Part shown: positions 36,369 through 47,374 of the stretch, piece after piece
Numbering within the stretch: position 1 is the first letter of the stretch
Layout: every line of letters begins with the position of its first letter
Source of the DNA: Guillardia theta CCMP2712
Taxonomy: Eukaryota > Protista > Cryptophyta
Direction of reading: 5' to 3'
Assembly (NCBI RefSeq): GCF_000315625.1
Contig: NW_005434514.1
Coordinates: forward strand, 70,740 to 125,370
DNA: 54,631 bases
Made by a program: the position numbers and the translations under genes
The notes under the pieces: generated by a model
Told to the model about the DNA's origin: nothing
Seen by the model: only the letters and a program-made list of their open reading frames with translations
Databases searched by the model: none

Positions 36369-37130
36369 AGAAGAGAGGAGAAAAGGATTCCGCTCTCACG
36401 TGGGAAGAGGCTTGCCGTCTTTCATCCAACAAATGCCGCAACCGATTCTGCATGGTTCCATTCACACCTTCCTCTTCCTCTTCCTCCTCCTCCNNNNNNN
36501 NNNNNNNNNNNNNNNNNNNNNNNNNNNNNNNNNNNNNNNNNNNNNNNNNNNNNNNNNNNNNNNNNNNNNNNNNNNNNNNNNNNNNNNNNNNNNCTCCTCC
36601 CCCCTTTTTTAGCCGCAAGAACATGTAACAACACCCCCCCCCCCCCCCCCCCCGGCTCCTCCCTCCCCCCCCCCCCCCCCCCCCCCTCCTCCTCCTCCTC
36701 CTCCTCCTCCTCCTCCTCCTCGATCTCTTGCTCCACCCACTCGCTCCTTTCCTATACCTTCTTCCCGTCTTGGCTCTCAAAGATGGTAGAAGAAACCTGC
36801 CAGAACGGTGGGTCAGTGAAGATCATGCAAGGAAAAGCGACTAAGAAGGAGAGGACGGAGGAGGAAAAGGAGGAGAGAGAGGAGGAGAGAGGAGGGAGGG
36901 CGGGGGGGTTGAAGGAAGGGATGTAGGAGGGAGGGATTGGGGTGGTATAACAAAATCTTCTTATTTCTCTGTACCGGGTTCTCAACCGAAATTTTTCTCT
37001 CAAGCTCGAAAGAGACTATCTTTTGGCCTGTATGAAAAGAGTCAGGAGGATGACGCAATTTGAGTGAGAGAGTGGAGGGAGCGATGAACAAGAAGAACGG
37101 CAGTGATGGGCGAAGTCATTGCTGTAGGAT

Positions 37131-39045: not shown

Positions 39046-39961
39046 CTGATGGAACAAAAACTCTCCTGTAAACCAAGACGACTTACGTGTTTTGCGAGGC
39101 GGCATGTAGCGTGTGACAGTGTGGGACGAAGAGGGGGCTTTTCCTAGCCGTCTCAGCTTGCTAAGGTCCTCTCATGTCTGGATGCTTGGGTTTCACATCC
39201 TAGCATACAGTCTATCACTCATGTGCTCCTCAATTCTGGTTTTGTGTGCATTAAACTCGGTCTTGAGCAAAAACTGTCTTGTTACAACTAAGGTCGATGT
39301 CACGTGATATCTGCGTGACTTTGGACTAGTACAAGTCTAACAAACTTGTATTCCGTCATGGCCCGGCCGGGCTGGCCAGGCACCGCCGTTCACCCTCGGT
39401 CGACCAACACTACTTGAATGACCAGCACTATTCGGATGACCCAGCCCGGCTGCCAGTACAGGCCGGGCCGGACCCGGGCCCCGACCGTCAGTACTGTACC
39501 GACGGTGACTCGTGACCGTGACTCCAGTCCGAGGCCGGGCGGGGATGAGGGGGCCCGGGGAAAGGGAGTTAACCCCGCAGCTAGACGGACCCCCTCAGCC
39601 TCCCAGAGATTACAGGCAATACCCCTGGTGGGTACTTCGTATGGGTGGGGTACAATCAGAGGGCAAAGGAGGGGTGGGGAAGGACGGCCTTTGGTGTGAG
39701 CTGCCTTGATGGCAACCAGTAGCGCGATGGTTGTGTTGGTGCGTCCCCTCCTCCCCTCGCCGCTCCTCGCTAGTCCCTCCCTCTCCTGAGCTCTGCCGCC
39801 TGCTGACCCCCAGCCGCCGCTCTTGCCTGCGCGATGGGCACAAGGTCTCGGTAGAGGTGGTGTATCAGCTCTCGCGCGCGCAATCCGGGTGAGTCTGTAC
39901 AAGCGTCAGAGGGAGGAAGGAGATGAAGAGCGAGGGCTAGCTTCTCTTGGTCGCAGGAGAG

Positions 39962-42900
39962 ATGAAGCTCTCTGTCATCTTGCTGCATGCCGTGATCGGC
40001 TCGCTTCTTCCGTTGCATGCGTCCTCGCAGTGTGAGCGGCTGCTGGAGCAAGGCTTCGGCGGGGGAAGCTTCATCCATGGGAGCATATCATGGCGGCGGG
40101 TGTCGATGTACACGGTGGAGTTTGAGGTGATGAGCACGTGGCGGCGGAAGTTCGCGTGGCCTTGCAACCAGCAAGGCTTCAGCGGGAGGGACGGTTGGCC
40201 AGCGCCAGGGGACCGAGTGCTGACAGCAGGGCTGGGGTACAAGGAGGATCAGAGTCAAGGGGAGACGGTGGGGATCAGCTTCGAGACAGGAGACGGGGCG
40301 AGGTATCCTTTCTGGATGAGGGTGGACTCAATCTCAGTAGAGGAAGACTGGATGATGGGCACGTTTCGAATGAATCATACCTACCAAAGGGGCTATGAAT
40401 CATGCTCAAGTAACCAGTCAACTTCACCTTACATTTGCAATCCATGGACAGCGAGGCTGGCAGGGTGCTGCCGGTACAACTACTCCGGAAGCTTCGCGAT
40501 AGAGTCGCAGGTCGACCTCTCGAGCTTCAACGCCTCGTTTCGGATCGTGACCATGCCCGTCGTGTTTGCTCCGGTCGAGGCGAGCACGCGAGCGTCTACG
40601 ATATGCTTCATACCTCGGTCGGGGATGGTGTCGAGGAGCGGGGGGACCGTGGGCTATCCCCTGGACGACTACGTGTATCAGAACGCGTCCTGGTCGCTGG
40701 TGGGATCGTACGCGGGTCAGGTCGGCTTGCTGTACAACAGGTCGGCCATGGGGGAGTACTGCGTGGGACTGGAGGTGCAGCCAGGTACCGGGATGGCAGT
40801 GACGGTGATGCTGAGCGTGGGGAACCTCAACTCGACATGCGAGCTTCAGGTCAGGGCGGCGAGCGCGAGCAGCCGCTTGCCGTCCAACACGACGCTGAGG
40901 TGTTGGAGCGAGGAGTGCGCGTCGCACATGGAGGTGTTTTTCGGGTACGACTTTCCCCGGCTGTACCCCGGGGAGATCGCGAGGGCGATGGCGGACATGT
41001 ATGCAGAGAACAAGGACGGGAAGCCTCTGGAGGTGCGGTACAGGTTTGCCAGCAAGGAGCTGGCGAGCGCGGTGGTGTCGTCGGACAGCAGGGCGGTGGA
41101 GAGCGTTTACAGCTGGAACCTGTCAGAGGCTGGGCTGCACTCGAGCTTCACGCTGAACCACTTCAGCACGCCTGAGGACACGTACGTGACGGACATACAC
41201 GTGCTCTACTCGCAAGCAGTCGACCAGGCCCAGCTGCCTCTGTACGGCAGCTTGTCGTCTGCATCACCGACGCCGGGAGAGTACACTGTGAACGTGACGT
41301 CGGTGTTCACGACGTTCCCGGCGAACGTGCTGGTGCTCTCACCCGACCCGAGCAGTCAGAGCTCTCATGGCTGGTCCTTCATGTACTACAAGACGCTACT
41401 CCGCCTGACCAAGCTGAGCATGTCGACGGACGCGTACGAGCTACGAGCTATCACAGACATACGACTGGTGAACAGCAGCAAGGAGGCAGAGCCTTTGCTG
41501 CGAGAGGGCTACGTGATGCTGGGGGAGAACCTGCTGGGGCCGGGGTCAGTCGGAGAGATCTACTTGCTGTACAAGCGGGGCACGGACCCGCCAATCATCG
41601 ATGTCTCGATCAGCAACATCAGCGGATACAGCGCGGTAGGAGAGGGGAAGGGGGAGAGGAGGAGATCGAGAGGGGAGGGGAGGGGGAGGGGCACCAGAGT
41701 ACATGTATGCGAGAAGAGGGATTGGGAGGCTGGAGTTGGGGCGGGGAGTAACGCAGGATGTTGGCTGCAGGTAGAAGCTTCCTCCTATTTACCAGCAGTG
41801 GGAGCAAATTCAACGGAAACGGAATATAGAGTAGTGCTGTACTACCTGAAGAAGCCGCTGAGCTCTCTGTCGATGAGCTTCTTGTGGACGCCTTGCGAGG
41901 CTGACGTGGGAGTCTACGTGATCTGCGCTCAGCTGGTAGACTCGTTGAGCGGTAAGACGTGCGGGCGGTAGGAGGGAGGAGGCTGACATGTGGTCGTGTG
42001 TGCTGGCACGTCAGGTGGAGGCGGCAGGACCCAGTGCACGTCGGTGACGGTCGGTCGAGCTCCTGCGCCGTACACGGAGGCGCTGCCGGTACAGGTAGCG
42101 ACGATGGGAGAGGAGGTAGGAGGAGAGGGCGGGGGCGGGGGCATGGGAGCTGAGGAGATGGTGAGCAGCAACGGATCGTCTTCACGGTGGCGCGGCAGGA
42201 CCAAGGCTTTGCCGAGTACTACAGGCTGCCGTCGATCCGTCTCTCGCGCATCCTGTAAGCTCAGAGGCTGGCGGGCTAGAGCTGGGGGCAGGGAGTGACG
42301 GGGCGGACGGCAGGGGGAACGTGCCGTCGCGTGTGGGGAACCTGACCACCTTTGAGCCGCTGCATCCTGTGGTGGAGATGCGGGTCAACGGGGCGACGAC
42401 GATGACGCTGAGCAACGTGAGCGTCTTCGAGAACAAGACGCGGCTGGACGGGTCGAGGTACTCCTTCCAGGGGCTCTACAACGGGAGCATCGTGTGGACC
42501 CCGAGCCACCAGCTCAGCGGGTGGCAGGGAGCGATGTGCCTGACGACGTGCGTGTACCCGTTGACCTGTCGGGGGTGGAGCCGGGAGAGGAGGGCGGAGT
42601 GCTCGGAGTACTGCATCCCAGTGAGGGTGGAGCGGTGCAAGTGGTACGTGTCGCGGGCACAGACGTACACGGAGATAGCGGGGCTGTTCTCGACGAGCTC
42701 GCTGCTGGTACGAGACGAGAGGGGGGAAGAGGGAGGAGCTGACAGGGATGGGCAGCTCTGGTACATGAACCCAGTAAGGCAGTCCAGTCTGCATTACGAC
42801 AACTTTCAAAGCTTAACGCCAGGTTACAATTTTATGATCTACCCTGGAGAGGTAGGAGGAGGAGACGGGGGGAAGGAGGAGGGGACTGAGACAGGCTGCG

Positions 42901-43185
42901 CAGACGATCAATGTTGGTCGGAAGTATCTGTCAGAGTATGAGAATGTACAAGTGTGAAAGATGTTTCAATGTTCGACTGAAAGTCTCTCAGATTTTTGAT
43001 GTCGCACAATACTTTGGTATGAGCACCTCGGACATCTTGAGGATGAACGTCGACCTCAACTCCAGCGTTCTCAACAGCGACAAACAATTAAATCAGGTAC
43101 AGGAGTAGGCAGGTATGTTGCGATATGATCTTACGTGCTGGAACAGGATCTTTGTATAGTACCAAACGTGTGCGTGATGTTGTAA
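39962..43185 (+). CDS. Secreted multidomain protein, copy A: signal peptide, Sib-like N-terminal domain, MABP beta-prism, two LysM motifs
   Basis: Signal MKLSVILLHAVIGSLLPLHASS. Sib-like FIHGSISWRR...LAGCCR. MABP-type AITDIRLV...GYVMLGENL...IYLLYKR...PIIDV. LysM1 WYVSRAQTYTEIAGLF...LWYMNP...IYPGE|TINVG. LysM2 IFDVAQYFGMSTSDILRMNVDL...NQ|DLCIVPNVCVML*. Confidence 0.8.
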
Positions 43186-43515
43186 TGTGCGAGCAGAAGG
43201 ATCAGCGCTGACGGTCTCATGACCTTGCAGTTGGGAATCTTTTCTATGTACAGAGAAATGAAGAAAACCCTCGATCAGTGCAACTTTGTGTATATCGCAC
43301 TTGGTTTCCCTCTTGAACAATCCTAGCATCTCCATGTAAGATCGCACGCTCTGATTGTGGAAAGAATTTGGCGAGATGGTTGAATCTAGTGTAGAAACAG
43401 AAAATAAATGTAACAAGACACAGACACGAGTGTTTCAGCTAATCATTTACAAGAGCTCATTTCCTCATTCCAGCCCATGTCAAATCGTCGATCTAAACAA
43501 CTTGTACGGGGAACA

Positions 43516-46500
43516 TCATTTGAAAATGCATATGTTTGGTACTATACAAAGATCCTGTTCCAGCACGTAAGATCATATCGCAACATACCTGCCTACTCCT
43601 GTACCTGATTTAATTGTTTGTCGCTGTTGAGAACGCTGGAGTTGAGGTCGACGTTCATCCTCAAGATGTCCGAGGTGCCGATGCTGAACAGAGCAGCTAC
43701 ATGGGAAACCTGAGGTGATAGGTAAGACACAAGACAACGACCTCAAGTCGCTCATACATTCTTTCCAGTCGAATGAAACAACCTTCCAACATTGATCGTC
43801 TGCACAGCCTGTCTCAGTCCCCTCCTCCTCCCTCCCGTCCCCTCCTCCTCCCTCCCGTCTCCTCCTCCTCCTACCTCTCCAGGGTAGAACATAAAATTGT
43901 AACCTGGCGTTAAGCTTTGAAAGTTGTCGTAATGCAGACTGGACTGCCTTACTGGGTTCATGTACCAGAGCTGCCCATCCCTGTCAGCTCCTCCCTCTTC
44001 CCCCCTCTCGTCTCGTACCAGCAGCGAGCTCGTCGAGAACAGCCCCGCTATCTCCGTGTACGTCTGTGCCCGCGACACGTACCACTTGCACCGCTCCACC
44101 CTCACTGGGATGCAGTACTCCGAGCACTCCGCCCTCCTCTCCCGGCTCCACCCCCGACAGGTCAACGGGTACACGCACGTCGTCAGGCACATCGCTCCCT
44201 GCCACCCGCTGAGCTGGTGGCTCGGGGTCCACACGATGCTCCCGTTGTAGAGCCCCTGGAAGGAGTACCTCGACCCGTCCAGCCGCGTCTTGTTCTCGAA
44301 GACGCTCACGTTGCTCAGCGTCATCGTCGTCGCCCCGTTGACCCGCATCTCCACCACAGGATGCAGCGGCTCAAAGGTGGTCAGGTTCCCCACACGCGAC
44401 GGCACGTTCCCCCTGCCGTCCGCCCCGTCACTCCCTGCCCCCAGCTCTAGCCCGCCAGCCTCTGAGCTTACAGGATGCGCGAGAGACGGATCGACGGCAG
44501 CCTGTAGTACTCGGCAAAGCCTTGGTCCTGCCGCGCCACCGTGAAGACGATCCGTTGCTGCTCACCATCTCCTCAGCTCCCATGCCCCCGCCCCCGCCCT
44601 CTCCTCCTACCTCCTCTCCCATCGTCGCTACCTGTACCGGCAGCGCCTCCGTGTACGGCGCAGGAGCTCGACCGACCGTCACCGACGTGCACTGGGTCCT
44701 GCCGCCTCCACCTGACGTGCCAGCACACACGACCACATGTCAGCCTCCTCCCTCCTACCGCCCGCACGTCTTACCGCTCAACGAGTCTACCAGCTGAGCG
44801 CAGATCACGTAGACTCCCACGTCAGCCTCGCAAGGCGTCCACAAGAAGCTCATCGACAGAGAGCTCAGCGGCTTCTTCAGGTAGTACAGCACTACTCTAT
44901 ATTCCGTTTGCGTATTTGCTCCCACTGCTGGTAAATAGGAGGAAGCTTCTACCTGCGGCCAACATCCTGCGTCACTCCCCGCCCCGCTTCTGTGCCCCTC
45001 TCCTCCTCTCCCTTGGGCCCCCCGTCCCTCCCAATCCCTCTTCTCGCATACATGTACTCTGGTGCCCCTCTTCCTCCCCTCCTCTCCCCTCCTCTCCCCT
45101 CCTCTCCCCCTTCCCCTCTCCTACCGCGCTGTATCCGCTGATGTTGCTGATCGAGACATTGATGATTGGCGGGTCCGTGCCCCGCTTGTACAGCAAGTAG
45201 ATCTCTCCGACTGACCCCGGCCCCAGCAGGTTCTCCCCCAGCATCACGTAGCCCTCTCGCAGCAAAGGCTCTGCCTCCTTGCTGCTGTTCACCAGTCGTA
45301 TGTCTGTGATAGCTCGCAGCTCGTACGCGTCCGTCGACATGCTCAGCTTGGTCAGGCGGAGTAGCGTCTTGGAGTACATGAAGGACCAGCCATGAGAGCT
45401 CTGACTGCTCGGGTCGGGTGAGAGCACCAGCACGTTCGCCGGGAACGTCGTGAACACCGACGTCACGTTCACAGTGTACTCTCCCGGCGTCGGTGATGCA
45501 GACGACAAGCTGCCGTACAGAGGCAGCTGGGCCTGGTCGACTGCTTGCGAGTAGAGCACGTGTATGTCCGTCACGTACGTGTCCTCAGGCGTGCTGAAGT
45601 GGTTCAGCGTGAAGCTCGAGTGCAGCCCAGCCTCTGACAGGTTCCAGCTGTAAAAGCTCTCTACCGCCCTGCTGTCCGACGACACCACCGCGCTCGCCAG
45701 CTCCTTGCTGGCAAACCTGTACCGCACCTCCAGAGGCCTCCCGTCCTTGTTCTCTGCATACATGTCCGCCATCGCCCTCGCGATCTCCCCGGGGTACAGC
45801 CGGGGAAAGTCGTACCCGAAAAACACCTCCATGTGCGACGCGCACTCCTCGCTCCAACACCTCAGCGTCGTGTTGGACGGCAAGCGGCTGCTCGCGCTCG
45901 CCGCCCTGACCTGAAGCTCGCATGTCGAGTTGAGGTTCCCCACGCTCAGCATCACCGTCACTGCCATCCCGGTACCTGGCTGCACCTCCAGTCCCACGCA
46001 GTACTCCCCCATCGCCGACCTGTTGTACAGCAAGCCGACCTGACCTGCGTACGATCCCACCAGCGACCAGGACGCGTTCTGATACACGTAGTCGTCCAGC
46101 GGATAGCCCACGGTCCCCCCGCTCCTCGACACCATCCCCGACCGAGGTATGAAGCATATCGTAGACGCTCGCGTGCTCGCCTCGACCGGAGCAAACACGA
46201 CGGGCATGGTCACGATCCGAAACGAGGCGTTGAAGCTGGAGAGGTCGACCTGCGACTCTATCGCGAAGCTTCCGGAGTAGTTGTACCGGCAGCACCCTGC
46301 CAGCCTCGCTGTCCATGGATTGCAAATGTAAGGTGAAGTTGACTGGTTACTTGAGCATGATTCATAGCCCCTTTGGTAGGTATGATTCATTCGAAACGTG
46401 CCCATCATCCAGTCTTCCTCTACTGAGATTGAGTCCACCCTCATCCAGAAAGGATACCTCGCCCCGTCTCCTGTCTCGAAGCTGATCCCCACCGTCTCCC

Positions 46501-46798
46501 CTTGACTCTGATCCTCCTTGTACCCCAGCCCTGCTGTCAGCACTCGGTCCCCTGGCGCTGGCCAACCGTCCCTCCCGCTGAAGCCTTGCTGGTTGCAAGG
46601 CCACGCGAACTTCCGCCGCCACGTGCTTATCACCTCAAACTCCACCGTGTTCATCGACACCCGCCGCCATGATATGCTCCCATGGATGAAGCTTCCCCCG
46701 CCGAAGCCTTGCTCCAGCAGCCGCTCACACTGCGAGGACGCATGCAACGGAAGAAGCGAGCCGATCACGGCATGCAGCAAGATGACAGAGAGCTTCAT
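43516..46798 (-). CDS. Secreted Sib-like/MABP/LysM protein, copy B
   Basis: Reverse-complement paralog with intact frame and splice sites. LysM2 reads RLFHSTGKN|VSHVAALFSIGTSDILRMNVDL...NQ|DLCIVPNICIFK*. Confidence 0.8.
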
Positions 46799-47374
46799 CT
46801 CTCCTGCGACCAAGAGAAGCTAGCCCTCGCTCTTCATCTCCTTCCTCCCTCTGACGCTTGTACAGACTCACCCGGATCGCGCGCGCGAGAGCTGATACAC
46901 CACCTCTACCGAGACCTTGTGCACATCGCACAGGCAAGAGCGGCGGCTGGGGGTCAGCAGGCGGCAGAGCTCAGGAGAGGGAGGGACTAGCGAGGAGCGG
47001 CGAGGGGAGGAGGGGACGCACCAACACAACCATCGCGCTACTGGTTGCCATCAAGGCAGCTCACACCAAAGGCCGTCCTTCCCCACCCCTCCTTTGCCCT
47101 CTGATTGTACCCCACCAATACCAAGTACCCACCAGGGGTATTGCCTTTAATCTCTGGGAGGCTGAGGGGGTCCGTCTAGCTGCGGGGTTAACTCCCTTTC
47201 CCCGGGCCCCCTCATCCACCAATTTCTTTGGGTTCCGACATGGGCCGGTAGCTACGAGAACTGGTGGCTCGAGGAGGAGGGCGAGAAGGAGGAGGAGAAG
47301 GCAGACGATGAGGAGGGGAGGAGGAAGAGGAGGAGAAGGCAGGCGATGAGGAAGTGAGGAGGAAGAGAAGGAGC

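What the first reader, a model, noticed from the sequence alone, without database searches (positions are those of the whole stretch)
39543..47217. Tail-to-tail inverted gene pair, near-identical except for a variant LysM block: possible flip-flop or gene-conversion receptor switch
The two 3.6-kb arms, including ~420 bp of upstream DNA and the introns, differ only by scattered changes (Y/N, M/I, K/R, V/F, Y/S, D/N, STET/TQT, I/F), and about 1 kb next to the variable block appears identical. Both genes are intact. The only strongly different coding parts, the first half of LysM2 and the C-terminal tip, lie at the inner end of the palindrome. The outer contexts differ: copy A abuts a GC island, while copy B's upstream region stops at 47217 next to another gene. 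Any crossover between the arms would invert the centre and swap which LysM variant is joined to which promoter, as in bacterial invertible tail-fibre or shufflon loci. Arm-to-arm conversion would explain the homogeneity.
Basis: partly seen in the sequence, partly recalled or inferred. Interest (0 to 1): 0.85.

Follow-up and report, generated by a model that had tools for sequence, protein, structure and literature searches.

The report
Gene palindrome kept alike by conversion
Two mirror-image, tail-to-tail copies of a secreted sugar-binding (LysM-like) gene in the alga Guillardia theta are real and both are expressed, and they stay almost identical because the copies overwrite each other; this is a known kind of genome structure, and nothing found shows a genetic switch.

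Summary
The window is nuclear DNA of Guillardia theta. Arm A is 39543-43167, arm B is 47217-43534, and the spacer is 366 bp. Each arm holds a complete 9-exon gene of 905 or 904 aa plus 419 bp of upstream DNA.

The arms differ by about 1% in the outer 2.1 kb and not at all over 1020 bp. A 105-bp block in LysM2 has dS about 1.4, against 0.01 elsewhere. A 145-bp identical block follows, then diverged C-terminal tips.

Two metagenome contigs from a relative about 4% diverged carry the same spacer, both tips and the start of the opposite arm. The palindrome is therefore older than that split (exon-1 dS 0.089). The G. theta arms differ far less (dS 0.015, or 0), which shows concerted evolution by arm-to-arm gene conversion.

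The relative shows only the A-type block.

Both copies have their own near-identical promoter region, and RNA shows the 3' part of both. An inversion would change almost nothing functionally. Orientation heterogeneity could not be tested.

Verdict: a new member of a known kind, not a switch. The scan noted similar gene palindromes on other DNA of this genome.

The parts
39543..43167 (+). Arm A of the palindrome (3625 bp): 419 bp upstream DNA plus nearly the whole of gene A
43534..47217 (-). Arm B of the palindrome (3684 bp; longer because of 4-, 33- and 23-bp intron indels)
43168..43533 (.). Unique spacer (366 bp). It holds the last 5 codons and stop of both genes and their convergent 3' UTRs. 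The two halves keep weak inverted similarity (z 2.9, 2 of 1000 shuffles; orientation controls z -1.0 to 0.5).
   Evidence: An RNA contig spans 43144-43557, and a DNA contig in X1 and in X2 spans 43138-43563.
39962..43185 (+). Gene A, 905 aa, 9 exons: 39962-41635, 41771-41951, 42015-42115, 42169-42254, 42314-42707, 42756-42851, 42904-42945, 42992-43096, 43147-43185. It has a signal peptide, a SIBA-E_N-like N-terminal region, a Cys-rich module and two LysM-like repeats.
   Evidence: RNA-contig splice joints. Translation. The public partial model P0004 (GUITHDRAFT_155898) matches exons 2-9. Pfam results.
43516..46798 (-). Gene B, 904 aa, 9 exons: 46798-45125, 44952-44775, 44711-44611, 44557-44472, 44412-44019, 43970-43875, 43799-43758, 43709-43605, 43554-43516
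   Evidence: RNA-contig joints confirm introns 2, 3, 4, 5 and 7; the other introns are placed by symmetry. The exon 6/7 junction of B is not cleanly confirmed: one RNA contig shows a non-canonical 122-nt skip there, and six raw reads fit the canonical junction only loosely.
41817..42836 (+). 1020-bp tract with no difference from arm B 44909-43890 (exons 2-6 with their introns); probably the most recent conversion tract
   Evidence: P(0 differences) = 6.6e-5 at the outer-arm rate. The relative differs here by 4.1-4.7%.
42918..43022 (+). Variable block, A type: end of exon 7, intron 7 and start of exon 8. It encodes strand 1 and helix 1 of LysM2 and matches the consensus of the four paralogue C-termini aligned.
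   Evidence: (dS 1.37, dN 0.50 against B). The relative carries this type with 3 synonymous and no replacement changes.
43679..43785 (-). Variable block, B type (107 bp). It has the same intron position and is spliced in RNA. It departs from three positions that are invariant in the five-sequence alignment A2 (Y to F, G to S, M to I).
   Evidence: (joint 43707 to 43756). No other copy in the genome.
43023..43167 (+). 145-bp block identical to 43678-43534 (rest of exon 8, intron 8, start of exon 9). It is identical between arms in G. theta. In the relative at least 129 nt of the inverted copy are present, about 98% identical to the forward copy. The block is 5.5% diverged between the two lineages.
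   Evidence: Word depth is 164 against about 78 for its single-copy neighbours.

Best explanation
This is an old inverted (tail-to-tail) duplication of one gene, a small gene palindrome. Its two arms evolve in concert because they repeatedly repair or copy from each other (arm-to-arm gene conversion). The gene encodes a secreted, cryptophyte-specific protein with a SIBA-E_N-like N-terminal region and a C-terminal Cys-rich module with two LysM-like repeats. It is probably a glycan-binding surface or wall protein. Conversion has erased almost all divergence from the promoter region to within 18 nt of the stop codons. Three parts remain unconverted: the spacer (the diverged 3' UTRs), the last five codons, and a 105-bp patch encoding the first half of LysM2 in G. 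theta.

Shown: the structure, its age relative to a sister lineage, the concerted evolution, the patchy tracts, and RNA from the 3' part of both copies.

Inferred: the 105-bp patch is most likely a relic of the original divergence that G. theta still keeps and the relative has lost by conversion (about 55%). It may be retained because two slightly different LysM2 surfaces are useful. Less likely, it is a patch imported after the split from a donor no longer in the assembly (about 35%).

Spontaneous crossover between the arms could invert the centre now and then. That would be a by-product with almost no effect, because both genes are complete and carry their own near-identical upstream DNA. 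It is not a programmed switch.
For: (1) Anatomy.

(2) Age. Contigs L031 and L032 come from two ENA metagenome assemblies of a close relative. They run from the arm through an orthologous spacer (31 of 362 positions differ) that holds both C-terminal tips, and then 16 and about 129 nt into the inverted arm.

(3) Concerted evolution. Exon-1 dS is 0.088-0.089 between either arm and the relative, but 0.015 between the arms. The 1020-bp tract differs by 4.1-4.7% from the relative but by 0% between arms. The 145-bp block differs by 5.5% against 0%.

(4) Patchiness. Zero differences in 1020 bp has P = 6.6e-5. In the relative, all 20 differences between L031 and L032 lie in the tract that is identical in G. 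theta, and none lie in the 755 bp of inner arm plus spacer.

(5) Old centre. dS is 1.37 in the variable block against 0.010 elsewhere. The intron position is the same in both block types. The spacer halves keep inverted similarity (z 2.9; controls about 0).

(6) No third copy or donor exists in the genome.

(7) RNA from both copies. There are spliced RNA contigs for both variable blocks (depth 322 and 359). 3'-end reads lie on opposite strands at depth 17 and 8.

(8) The layout recurs. C119:34175-37814 pairs with 64318-60681 in inverted orientation (3.64 kb, 98.85%), with tail-to-tail genes carrying the same LysM module.
Against: The relative's second arm is seen only as a 16 to 129-nt stub. 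Beyond that it is inferred from how the assemblies behave and from the clustering of the L031/L032 differences. The claim that both of its arms carry the A-type block is therefore an inference. Whether the B-type block is a relic or an import is undecided. The block's dN/dS (0.36) gives no sign of positive selection. The residual similarity of the spacer halves is modest and is not significant in the relative (z 1.5). Orientation heterogeneity in G. theta was not testable. The exon 6/7 junction of copy B is not cleanly confirmed in RNA.
Confidence: 0.75

Rival explanations
1. Programmed flip-flop or shufflon-like receptor switch: regulated inversion of the centre decides which LysM2 variant is made.
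For: Crossover in the 1020-bp or 145-bp identical tracts would physically invert the centre. The divergent block lies in the part of LysM that forms the sugar groove in solved LysM structures (my own knowledge of the fold). Its position in strand 1 and helix 1 comes from a low-confidence model.
Against: Both genes are complete, each with 419 bp of 98.6%-identical upstream DNA, so an inversion would join like to like. RNA shows the 3' part of both variants in the same samples. The five flanking ORFs scanned have no Pfam hit at all, and so no recombinase domain. The repeats are whole genes, not short crossover sites. The related lineage shows only one block type. Similar inverted duplicates occur elsewhere in the genome.
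Confidence: 0.04
2. Young duplication plus imported patch: the arms are alike simply because the inverted duplication is recent, and the B-type block and tip were pasted in from elsewhere.
For: Arm divergence is only 0-1.4%. Patch-like replacements do occur at this locus: the relative differs from both G. theta arms by about 50% over some 45-51 nt at the end of exon 6, in a 4% background.
Against: The spacer with both diverged tips and the inverted arm start is shared with a lineage whose exon-1 dS to G. theta is 0.089, six times the arm-to-arm dS. The duplication therefore cannot be younger than that split. No donor for either block type, or for the exon-6 patch, exists in the genome. The patch-import part alone remains possible and is counted as a sub-case of the best explanation.
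Confidence: 0.08
3. Assembly artefact: two alleles or a collapsed repeat wrongly joined as a palindrome.
For: The scaffold has 100-N gaps nearby; the nearest is 36494-36593. Palindromes are hard to assemble.
Against: There are no Ns inside the palindrome. Contigs from DNA run X1, and from the uncharacterised 2011 run X2, span the spacer into both arms. The shared 145-bp block has twice the word depth of the spacer and of block A. Two further assemblies of a relative show the same layout. RNA contigs show both block types spliced.
Confidence: 0.02
4. Hairpin-RNA source: read-through across the centre makes a long double-stranded RNA that silences the family.
For: The 3' UTRs converge, and one RNA contig spans the whole spacer.
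Against: Stranded 3'-end reads fall off within the spacer on each strand: depth 17 falls to 0.4 on one strand and 8.3 to 0.9 on the other. Both genes keep intact frames under purifying selection (omega about 0.3). The mRNA contigs are spliced and abundant.
Confidence: 0.03

Closest known systems
Gene palindromes with arm-to-arm gene conversion (human and primate Y- and X-chromosome palindromes, the willow sex-chromosome palindromes of PMC7023750, and palindromes in the Folsomia candida genome, PMC5490193)
   Same: Inverted arms holding intact, expressed genes around a unique spacer. Arm identity is far higher than the age of the structure allows. The arm/spacer boundaries are sharp, and the arms evolve in concert.
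   Different: This one is about a thousand times smaller (3.6-kb arms, one gene per arm). It sits in a cryptophyte nuclear genome, is not known to be sex-linked, and has an internal 105-bp island that has escaped homogenisation.
Islands of divergence in duplicates homogenised by conversion (population-genetic models of Teshima and Innan; red/green opsin and RHD/RHCE type cases; cited from my own knowledge, not read here)
   Same: A sharply bounded, highly diverged patch lies inside otherwise near-identical duplicates, at a part of the protein likely to bind ligand.
   Different: Selection on the patch is not shown here (dN/dS 0.36). A close relative appears to have lost the second variant.
Bacterial invertible tail-fibre and shufflon loci (Gin/Cin/Hin, Rci)
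   Same: Inverted repeats flank alternative C-terminal receptor-binding segments.
   Different: Those systems have one promoter and one constant 5' part, short specific crossover sites and a dedicated recombinase, and one variant is expressed at a time. Here there are two complete genes and RNA from both, and no recombinase domain was found in the flanking ORFs scanned.
Inversion polymorphisms mediated by inverted segmental duplications through non-allelic homologous recombination (for example PMC3961182)
   Same: Crossover between long inverted repeats can flip the intervening DNA recurrently.
   Different: No orientation polymorphism has been observed here. It remains a possibility with little expected consequence.

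Membership tests
Palindrome evolving by arm-to-arm gene conversion | Two long inverted arms of high identity around a unique spacer | tested here: met
   Arms are 3625 and 3684 bp, about 99% identical outside the variable block; the spacer is 366 bp.
Palindrome evolving by arm-to-arm gene conversion | The structure is older than a lineage split, yet the arms are closer to each other than to the orthologous arm | tested here: met
   An orthologous spacer, both tips and the inverted arm start are present in L031 and L032. dS is 0.089 to the relative against 0.015 between arms. The inner tract differs by 4.1-4.7% against 0%. Caveat: the relative's second arm is seen for at most 129 nt.
Palindrome evolving by arm-to-arm gene conversion | Tract-like heterogeneity of identity along the arms | tested here: met
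   1020 bp has no differences (P = 6.6e-5). A different tract is homogenised in the relative.
Site-specific invertible switch (shufflon, Gin/Hin, FLP type) | A dedicated recombinase gene at or next to the locus | tested here: not met
   The five flanking ORFs scanned have no Pfam hit at E <= 0.01. Only ORFs next to the arms were scanned.
Site-specific invertible switch (shufflon, Gin/Hin, FLP type) | One expression site, so that orientation decides which variant is made | tested here: not met
   There are two complete genes with their own 419-bp upstream DNA. RNA shows the 3' part of both variants in the same runs.
Site-specific invertible switch (shufflon, Gin/Hin, FLP type) | Both orientations present among molecules of a clonal population | not testable with these tools
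   Only 31-mer contigs and 60-nt reads were available. The identical stretches to be bridged are 145 bp and 1020 bp in DNA and about 95 nt in mRNA.
LysM domain (PF01476) | Score over Pfam's gathering cut-off (20.9 bits) | tested here: not met
   The spliced copy-A C-terminus (P0004) scores 14.3 bits. Exon 8 alone scores 17.7 bits (A) and 13.1 bits (B). At least two paralogues pass (25.7 and 21.3 bits) in the same C-terminal LysM module.
LysM domain (PF01476) | Beta-alpha-alpha-beta fold resembling solved LysM structures | tested here: inconclusive
   The AlphaFold2 model has mean pLDDT 49. Both repeats show beta-alpha-alpha-beta topology at pLDDT 61-80. The best Foldseek matches are LysM proteins (4uz2, probability 0.96, E 0.02; also CERK1, CEBiP and Ecp6), but none reaches E <= 0.001.
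SIBA-E_N (PF24907, N-terminal domain of Dictyostelium integrin-beta-like Sib proteins) | Score over Pfam's cut-off (28.1 bits) | tested here: inconclusive
   This protein scores 19.6 bits (E about 1e-3), below the cut-off. Nine of 11 aligned family members match at E <= 1, and the best has E = 1.3e-16.

The most novel reading that the evidence does not exclude
The 105-bp block is kept different by selection. On this reading G. theta uses a conversion-homogenised palindrome to carry two co-expressed LysM2 binding surfaces on an otherwise identical protein. Short patch replacements, also seen at the end of exon 6 in the relative, would then be a recurrent way of diversifying the glycan-binding loops of this cryptophyte LysM family, and occasional centre inversions would reshuffle them.
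Probability: 0.15. Interest if true: 0.6.

Novelty: new member of a known kind. Interest (0 to 1): 0.35.

Why it matters
This locus is a clean, small and datable example of concerted evolution in a gene palindrome outside animals and plants. It has an outgroup showing that different tracts were homogenised in two sister lineages. It also corrects the gene model: the public protein covers only the last 313 of 905 residues, and no model of copy B turned up in the two searches. It defines a cryptophyte family that joins a Sib-like N-terminal domain to a LysM-like C-terminal module. It does not reveal a new switching mechanism.

Tried and rejected
1. Phasing the variable block with the spacer or tips. 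The single read-laying run (6000 letters) gave only 31-mer contigs and 60-nt 3'-end reads, which cannot bridge 145 bp of DNA or about 95 nt of mRNA identity. Orientation remains untested.

2. I first read L031 and L032 (A-type block joined to the B-side tip and spacer) as evidence for a flipped centre. I rejected this. If the relative's arms are identical up to the spacer, an assembler can attach the spacer in either orientation, so the contigs carry no phase information.

3. Donor search. Neither variable block, nor the relative's exon-6 patch, has any other copy in the G. theta genome.

4. More relatives. Two exact-pattern scans of JGI metagenome contigs found nothing. Protein searches found only Hanusia phi (an N-terminal fragment, 59% identity) and Cryptomonas paramaecium (33%), neither covering LysM2.

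5. Structure. AlphaFold2 models of the N-terminal 558 aa and of the C-terminal 313 aa were poor (pLDDT about 50). No fold assignment was attempted for the N-terminal part.

6. Literature. No paper was found on the ENA study PRJEB17505 or on inverted duplications in G. theta.

7. L032's 63-nt outer flank could not be matched to either the A or the B flank.

8. Copy B's intron 6. The only RNA-contig joint there is a non-canonical 122-nt skip in GGAGG-rich DNA. I treat it as unresolved rather than as evidence that B is mis-spliced.
Full report
**What and where.** The window is scaffold C160:70740-125370 of the 87-Mb nuclear genome of the cryptophyte alga Guillardia theta. The organism name comes from the scan's earlier notes and from the public protein GUITHDRAFT_155898.

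- The repeat finder reports inverted arms 39543-41665 / 45095-47217 (2123 nt, 99%), 41813-42882 / 43844-44913 (1070 nt, 99%) and 43023-43173 / 43528-43678.
- BLAST and a global alignment join these into one palindrome. Arm A is 39543-43167, arm B is 47217-43534, and the spacer is 43168-43533 (366 bp).
- Differences along the arms:
  - 6 in the 419 bp upstream of the start codon;
  - 12 in exon 1;
  - indels of 4, 33 and 23 bp in purine-rich introns;
  - none in 41817-42836 (1020 bp);
  - 58 of 105 positions in 42918-43022;
  - none in the next 145 bp.
- At the outer-arm rate, 1020 identical bases have P = 6.6e-5.
- Beyond the outer boundary there is no similarity (z 0.8 and -0.7).
- The genome has only these two copies, and there are no Ns inside the structure.

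**Gene models.** RNA contigs of run X6 give GT..AG joints for introns 1, 6, 7 and 8 of copy A and introns 2, 3, 4, 5 and 7 of copy B. By symmetry each copy has nine exons.
- Translation gives 905 aa (A) and 904 aa (B), both open.
In addition, 14 of 19 residues differ at 851-869, and the last five residues differ (VCVML against ICIFK).
- The arm ends 18 nt before the stop codons, so the spacer holds the last codons and both 3' UTRs.
- Caveat: B's exon 6/7 junction is not cleanly confirmed. One RNA contig shows a non-canonical 122-nt skip there. Six raw reads end at 43801 with loose letters that fit the canonical junction only loosely.

**The protein.**
- Exon 1 (558 aa) weakly matches Pfam SIBA-E_N (19.6 bits, below the cut-off). 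Nine of 11 aligned relatives match the same family, the best at E = 1.3e-16.
- G. theta has at least ten paralogues at 24-45% identity, and most of those examined show an N-terminal region followed by a C-terminal LysM-like module.
- Outside G. theta, only Hanusia phi (59%) and Cryptomonas paramaecium (33%) were found.
- LysM falls below Pfam's cut-off in this pair (14.3-17.7 bits). At least two paralogues pass it, in the same C-terminal module.
- A low-confidence model shows beta-alpha-alpha-beta topology for both repeats. Its best structural matches are LysM proteins, none of them significant.
- The variable block covers strand 1 and helix 1 of LysM2. The A type matches the consensus of the four aligned paralogue C-termini. 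The B type changes three positions that are invariant in that alignment.
- The public model P0004 covers only exons 2-9 of copy A.

**It is not an artefact, and both copies give RNA.**
- In DNA run X1, the 145-bp shared block has word depth 164, against 79.5 for the spacer and 76 for variable block A. A 426-nt contig runs from one arm through the spacer into the other.
- RNA contigs show both variable blocks spliced (depth 322 and 359).
- Stranded 3'-end reads cover A's end on one strand (depth 17) and B's end on the other (depth 8).

**Age and mechanism.** A protein search with copy B's open frame found P0003, and its cluster mate is P0005. Both come from ENA metagenome assemblies ERZ930064 and ERZ930071. 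Their contigs are L031 (1904 bp) and L032 (4251 bp).
- They are 4.1-4.7% diverged from G. theta in the arms.
- They continue through an orthologous spacer (31 of 362 positions differ) that contains both C-terminal tips.
- They end 16 and about 129 nt inside the inverted arm.
- The palindrome therefore predates the split of these lineages.
- Exon-1 dS is 0.088-0.089 between either arm and the relative, but 0.015 between the arms. The inner tract and the 145-bp block are 4-5.5% diverged between lineages and 0% between arms. This is concerted evolution.
- All 20 differences between L031 and L032 lie in the tract that is identical in G. theta. None lie in the 755 bp of inner arm plus spacer. This fits L031 and L032 sampling the relative's two arms, with other tracts homogenised there.

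**The variable block.**
- Its dS is 1.37, against 0.010 for the rest of the gene, and its dN/dS is 0.36.
- Both types keep the intron at the same place.
- The spacer halves keep weak inverted similarity (z 2.9; orientation controls near 0).
- No donor exists elsewhere in the genome.
- The relative's contigs carry the A type, with 3 synonymous and no replacement changes. They pass from it through the 145-bp block without breaking. With k = 127, this suggests that both of its arms are A type.
- I therefore read the B type as a relic of the original divergence that G. theta retains and the relative has lost (about 55%). The alternative is a later import (about 35%).
- A second patch makes the import reading plausible. 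About 45-51 nt at the end of exon 6 is roughly 50% different between the lineages, in a 4% background, and it too has no donor.

**Why it is not a switch.**
- Each gene is complete and has its own 98.6%-identical upstream DNA.
- RNA shows both variants together.
- No Pfam domain of any kind, and so no recombinase, was found in the five flanking ORFs scanned.
- The repeats are whole genes, not short crossover sites.
- A sister lineage shows a single block type.
- A crossover would join like to like.
- I could not test whether both orientations occur.
- The joining of the A block to the B tip in L031 and L032 is not evidence of a flip. An assembler can attach the spacer in either orientation to identical arms.

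**Context.**
- A second inverted duplication lies on C119 (34175-37814 against 64318-60681; 3.64 kb, 98.85% identical, 22.9-kb spacer). It holds tail-to-tail genes with the same LysM module.
- Earlier notes of this scan describe other gene palindromes kept by conversion in this genome and other inverted duplications.
- Gene palindromes with arm-to-arm conversion are well known on sex chromosomes and elsewhere (PMC7023750, PMC5490193).
- This locus is therefore a new, well-dated member of a known kind.

Noticed in passing
window 39962-41635 and 45125-46798: The public protein GUITHDRAFT_155898 (313 aa) starts inside exon 2 of copy A. Neither protein search returned a model containing the 558-aa first exon or any part of copy B. 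RNA contigs cover exon 1 and splice it to exon 2, so the real proteins are 905 and 904 aa.
   Followed up: partly
G000:C119:34175-37814 and 60681-64318 (L022, L023, L033, L034): A second inverted duplication: 3.64 kb, 98.85% identical, 22.9 kb apart, plus a 631-bp pair at 96%. It holds tail-to-tail genes that end in the same Cys-rich module with two LysM-like repeats.
   Followed up: partly
L031:1150-1200 (window 42800-42840, end of exon 6): The relative differs from both G. theta arms by about 50% over some 45-51 nt, with a 6-nt length change, in a 4% background. The patch lies in a lineage-specific loop between the two LysM repeats. No donor was found in the G. theta genome.
   Followed up: partly
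window 42800-43800: GC falls from 0.60-0.69 in the arms to 0.40-0.46 at the palindrome centre, including coding exons 7-9. This may be a mark of GC-biased conversion in the arms, or simply local composition.
   Followed up: no
G000:C4:872000-983000 (L019, L020, L021, L024): Four paralogues of the family lie within about 105 kb on scaffold C4. One pair is convergent (938797 onwards on the plus strand, 950251 backwards on the minus strand) but only about 30% identical.
   Followed up: partly
window 43144-43557: One RNA contig spans the whole spacer from the last splice acceptor of A to that of B. The convergent 3' UTRs therefore meet or overlap by at least 31 nt.
   Followed up: no
window 41200: DNA run X1 and RNA run X6 both show C>A at 41200 (about half the depth in X6). 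Neither reference arm has this variant.
   Followed up: no
window 43801-43924: An RNA contig joins 43924 to 43801 (a 122-nt skip with non-canonical ends) instead of the expected 75-nt intron 6 of copy B, in GGAGG-rich DNA. It could be an assembly artefact or an aberrant isoform.
   Followed up: no
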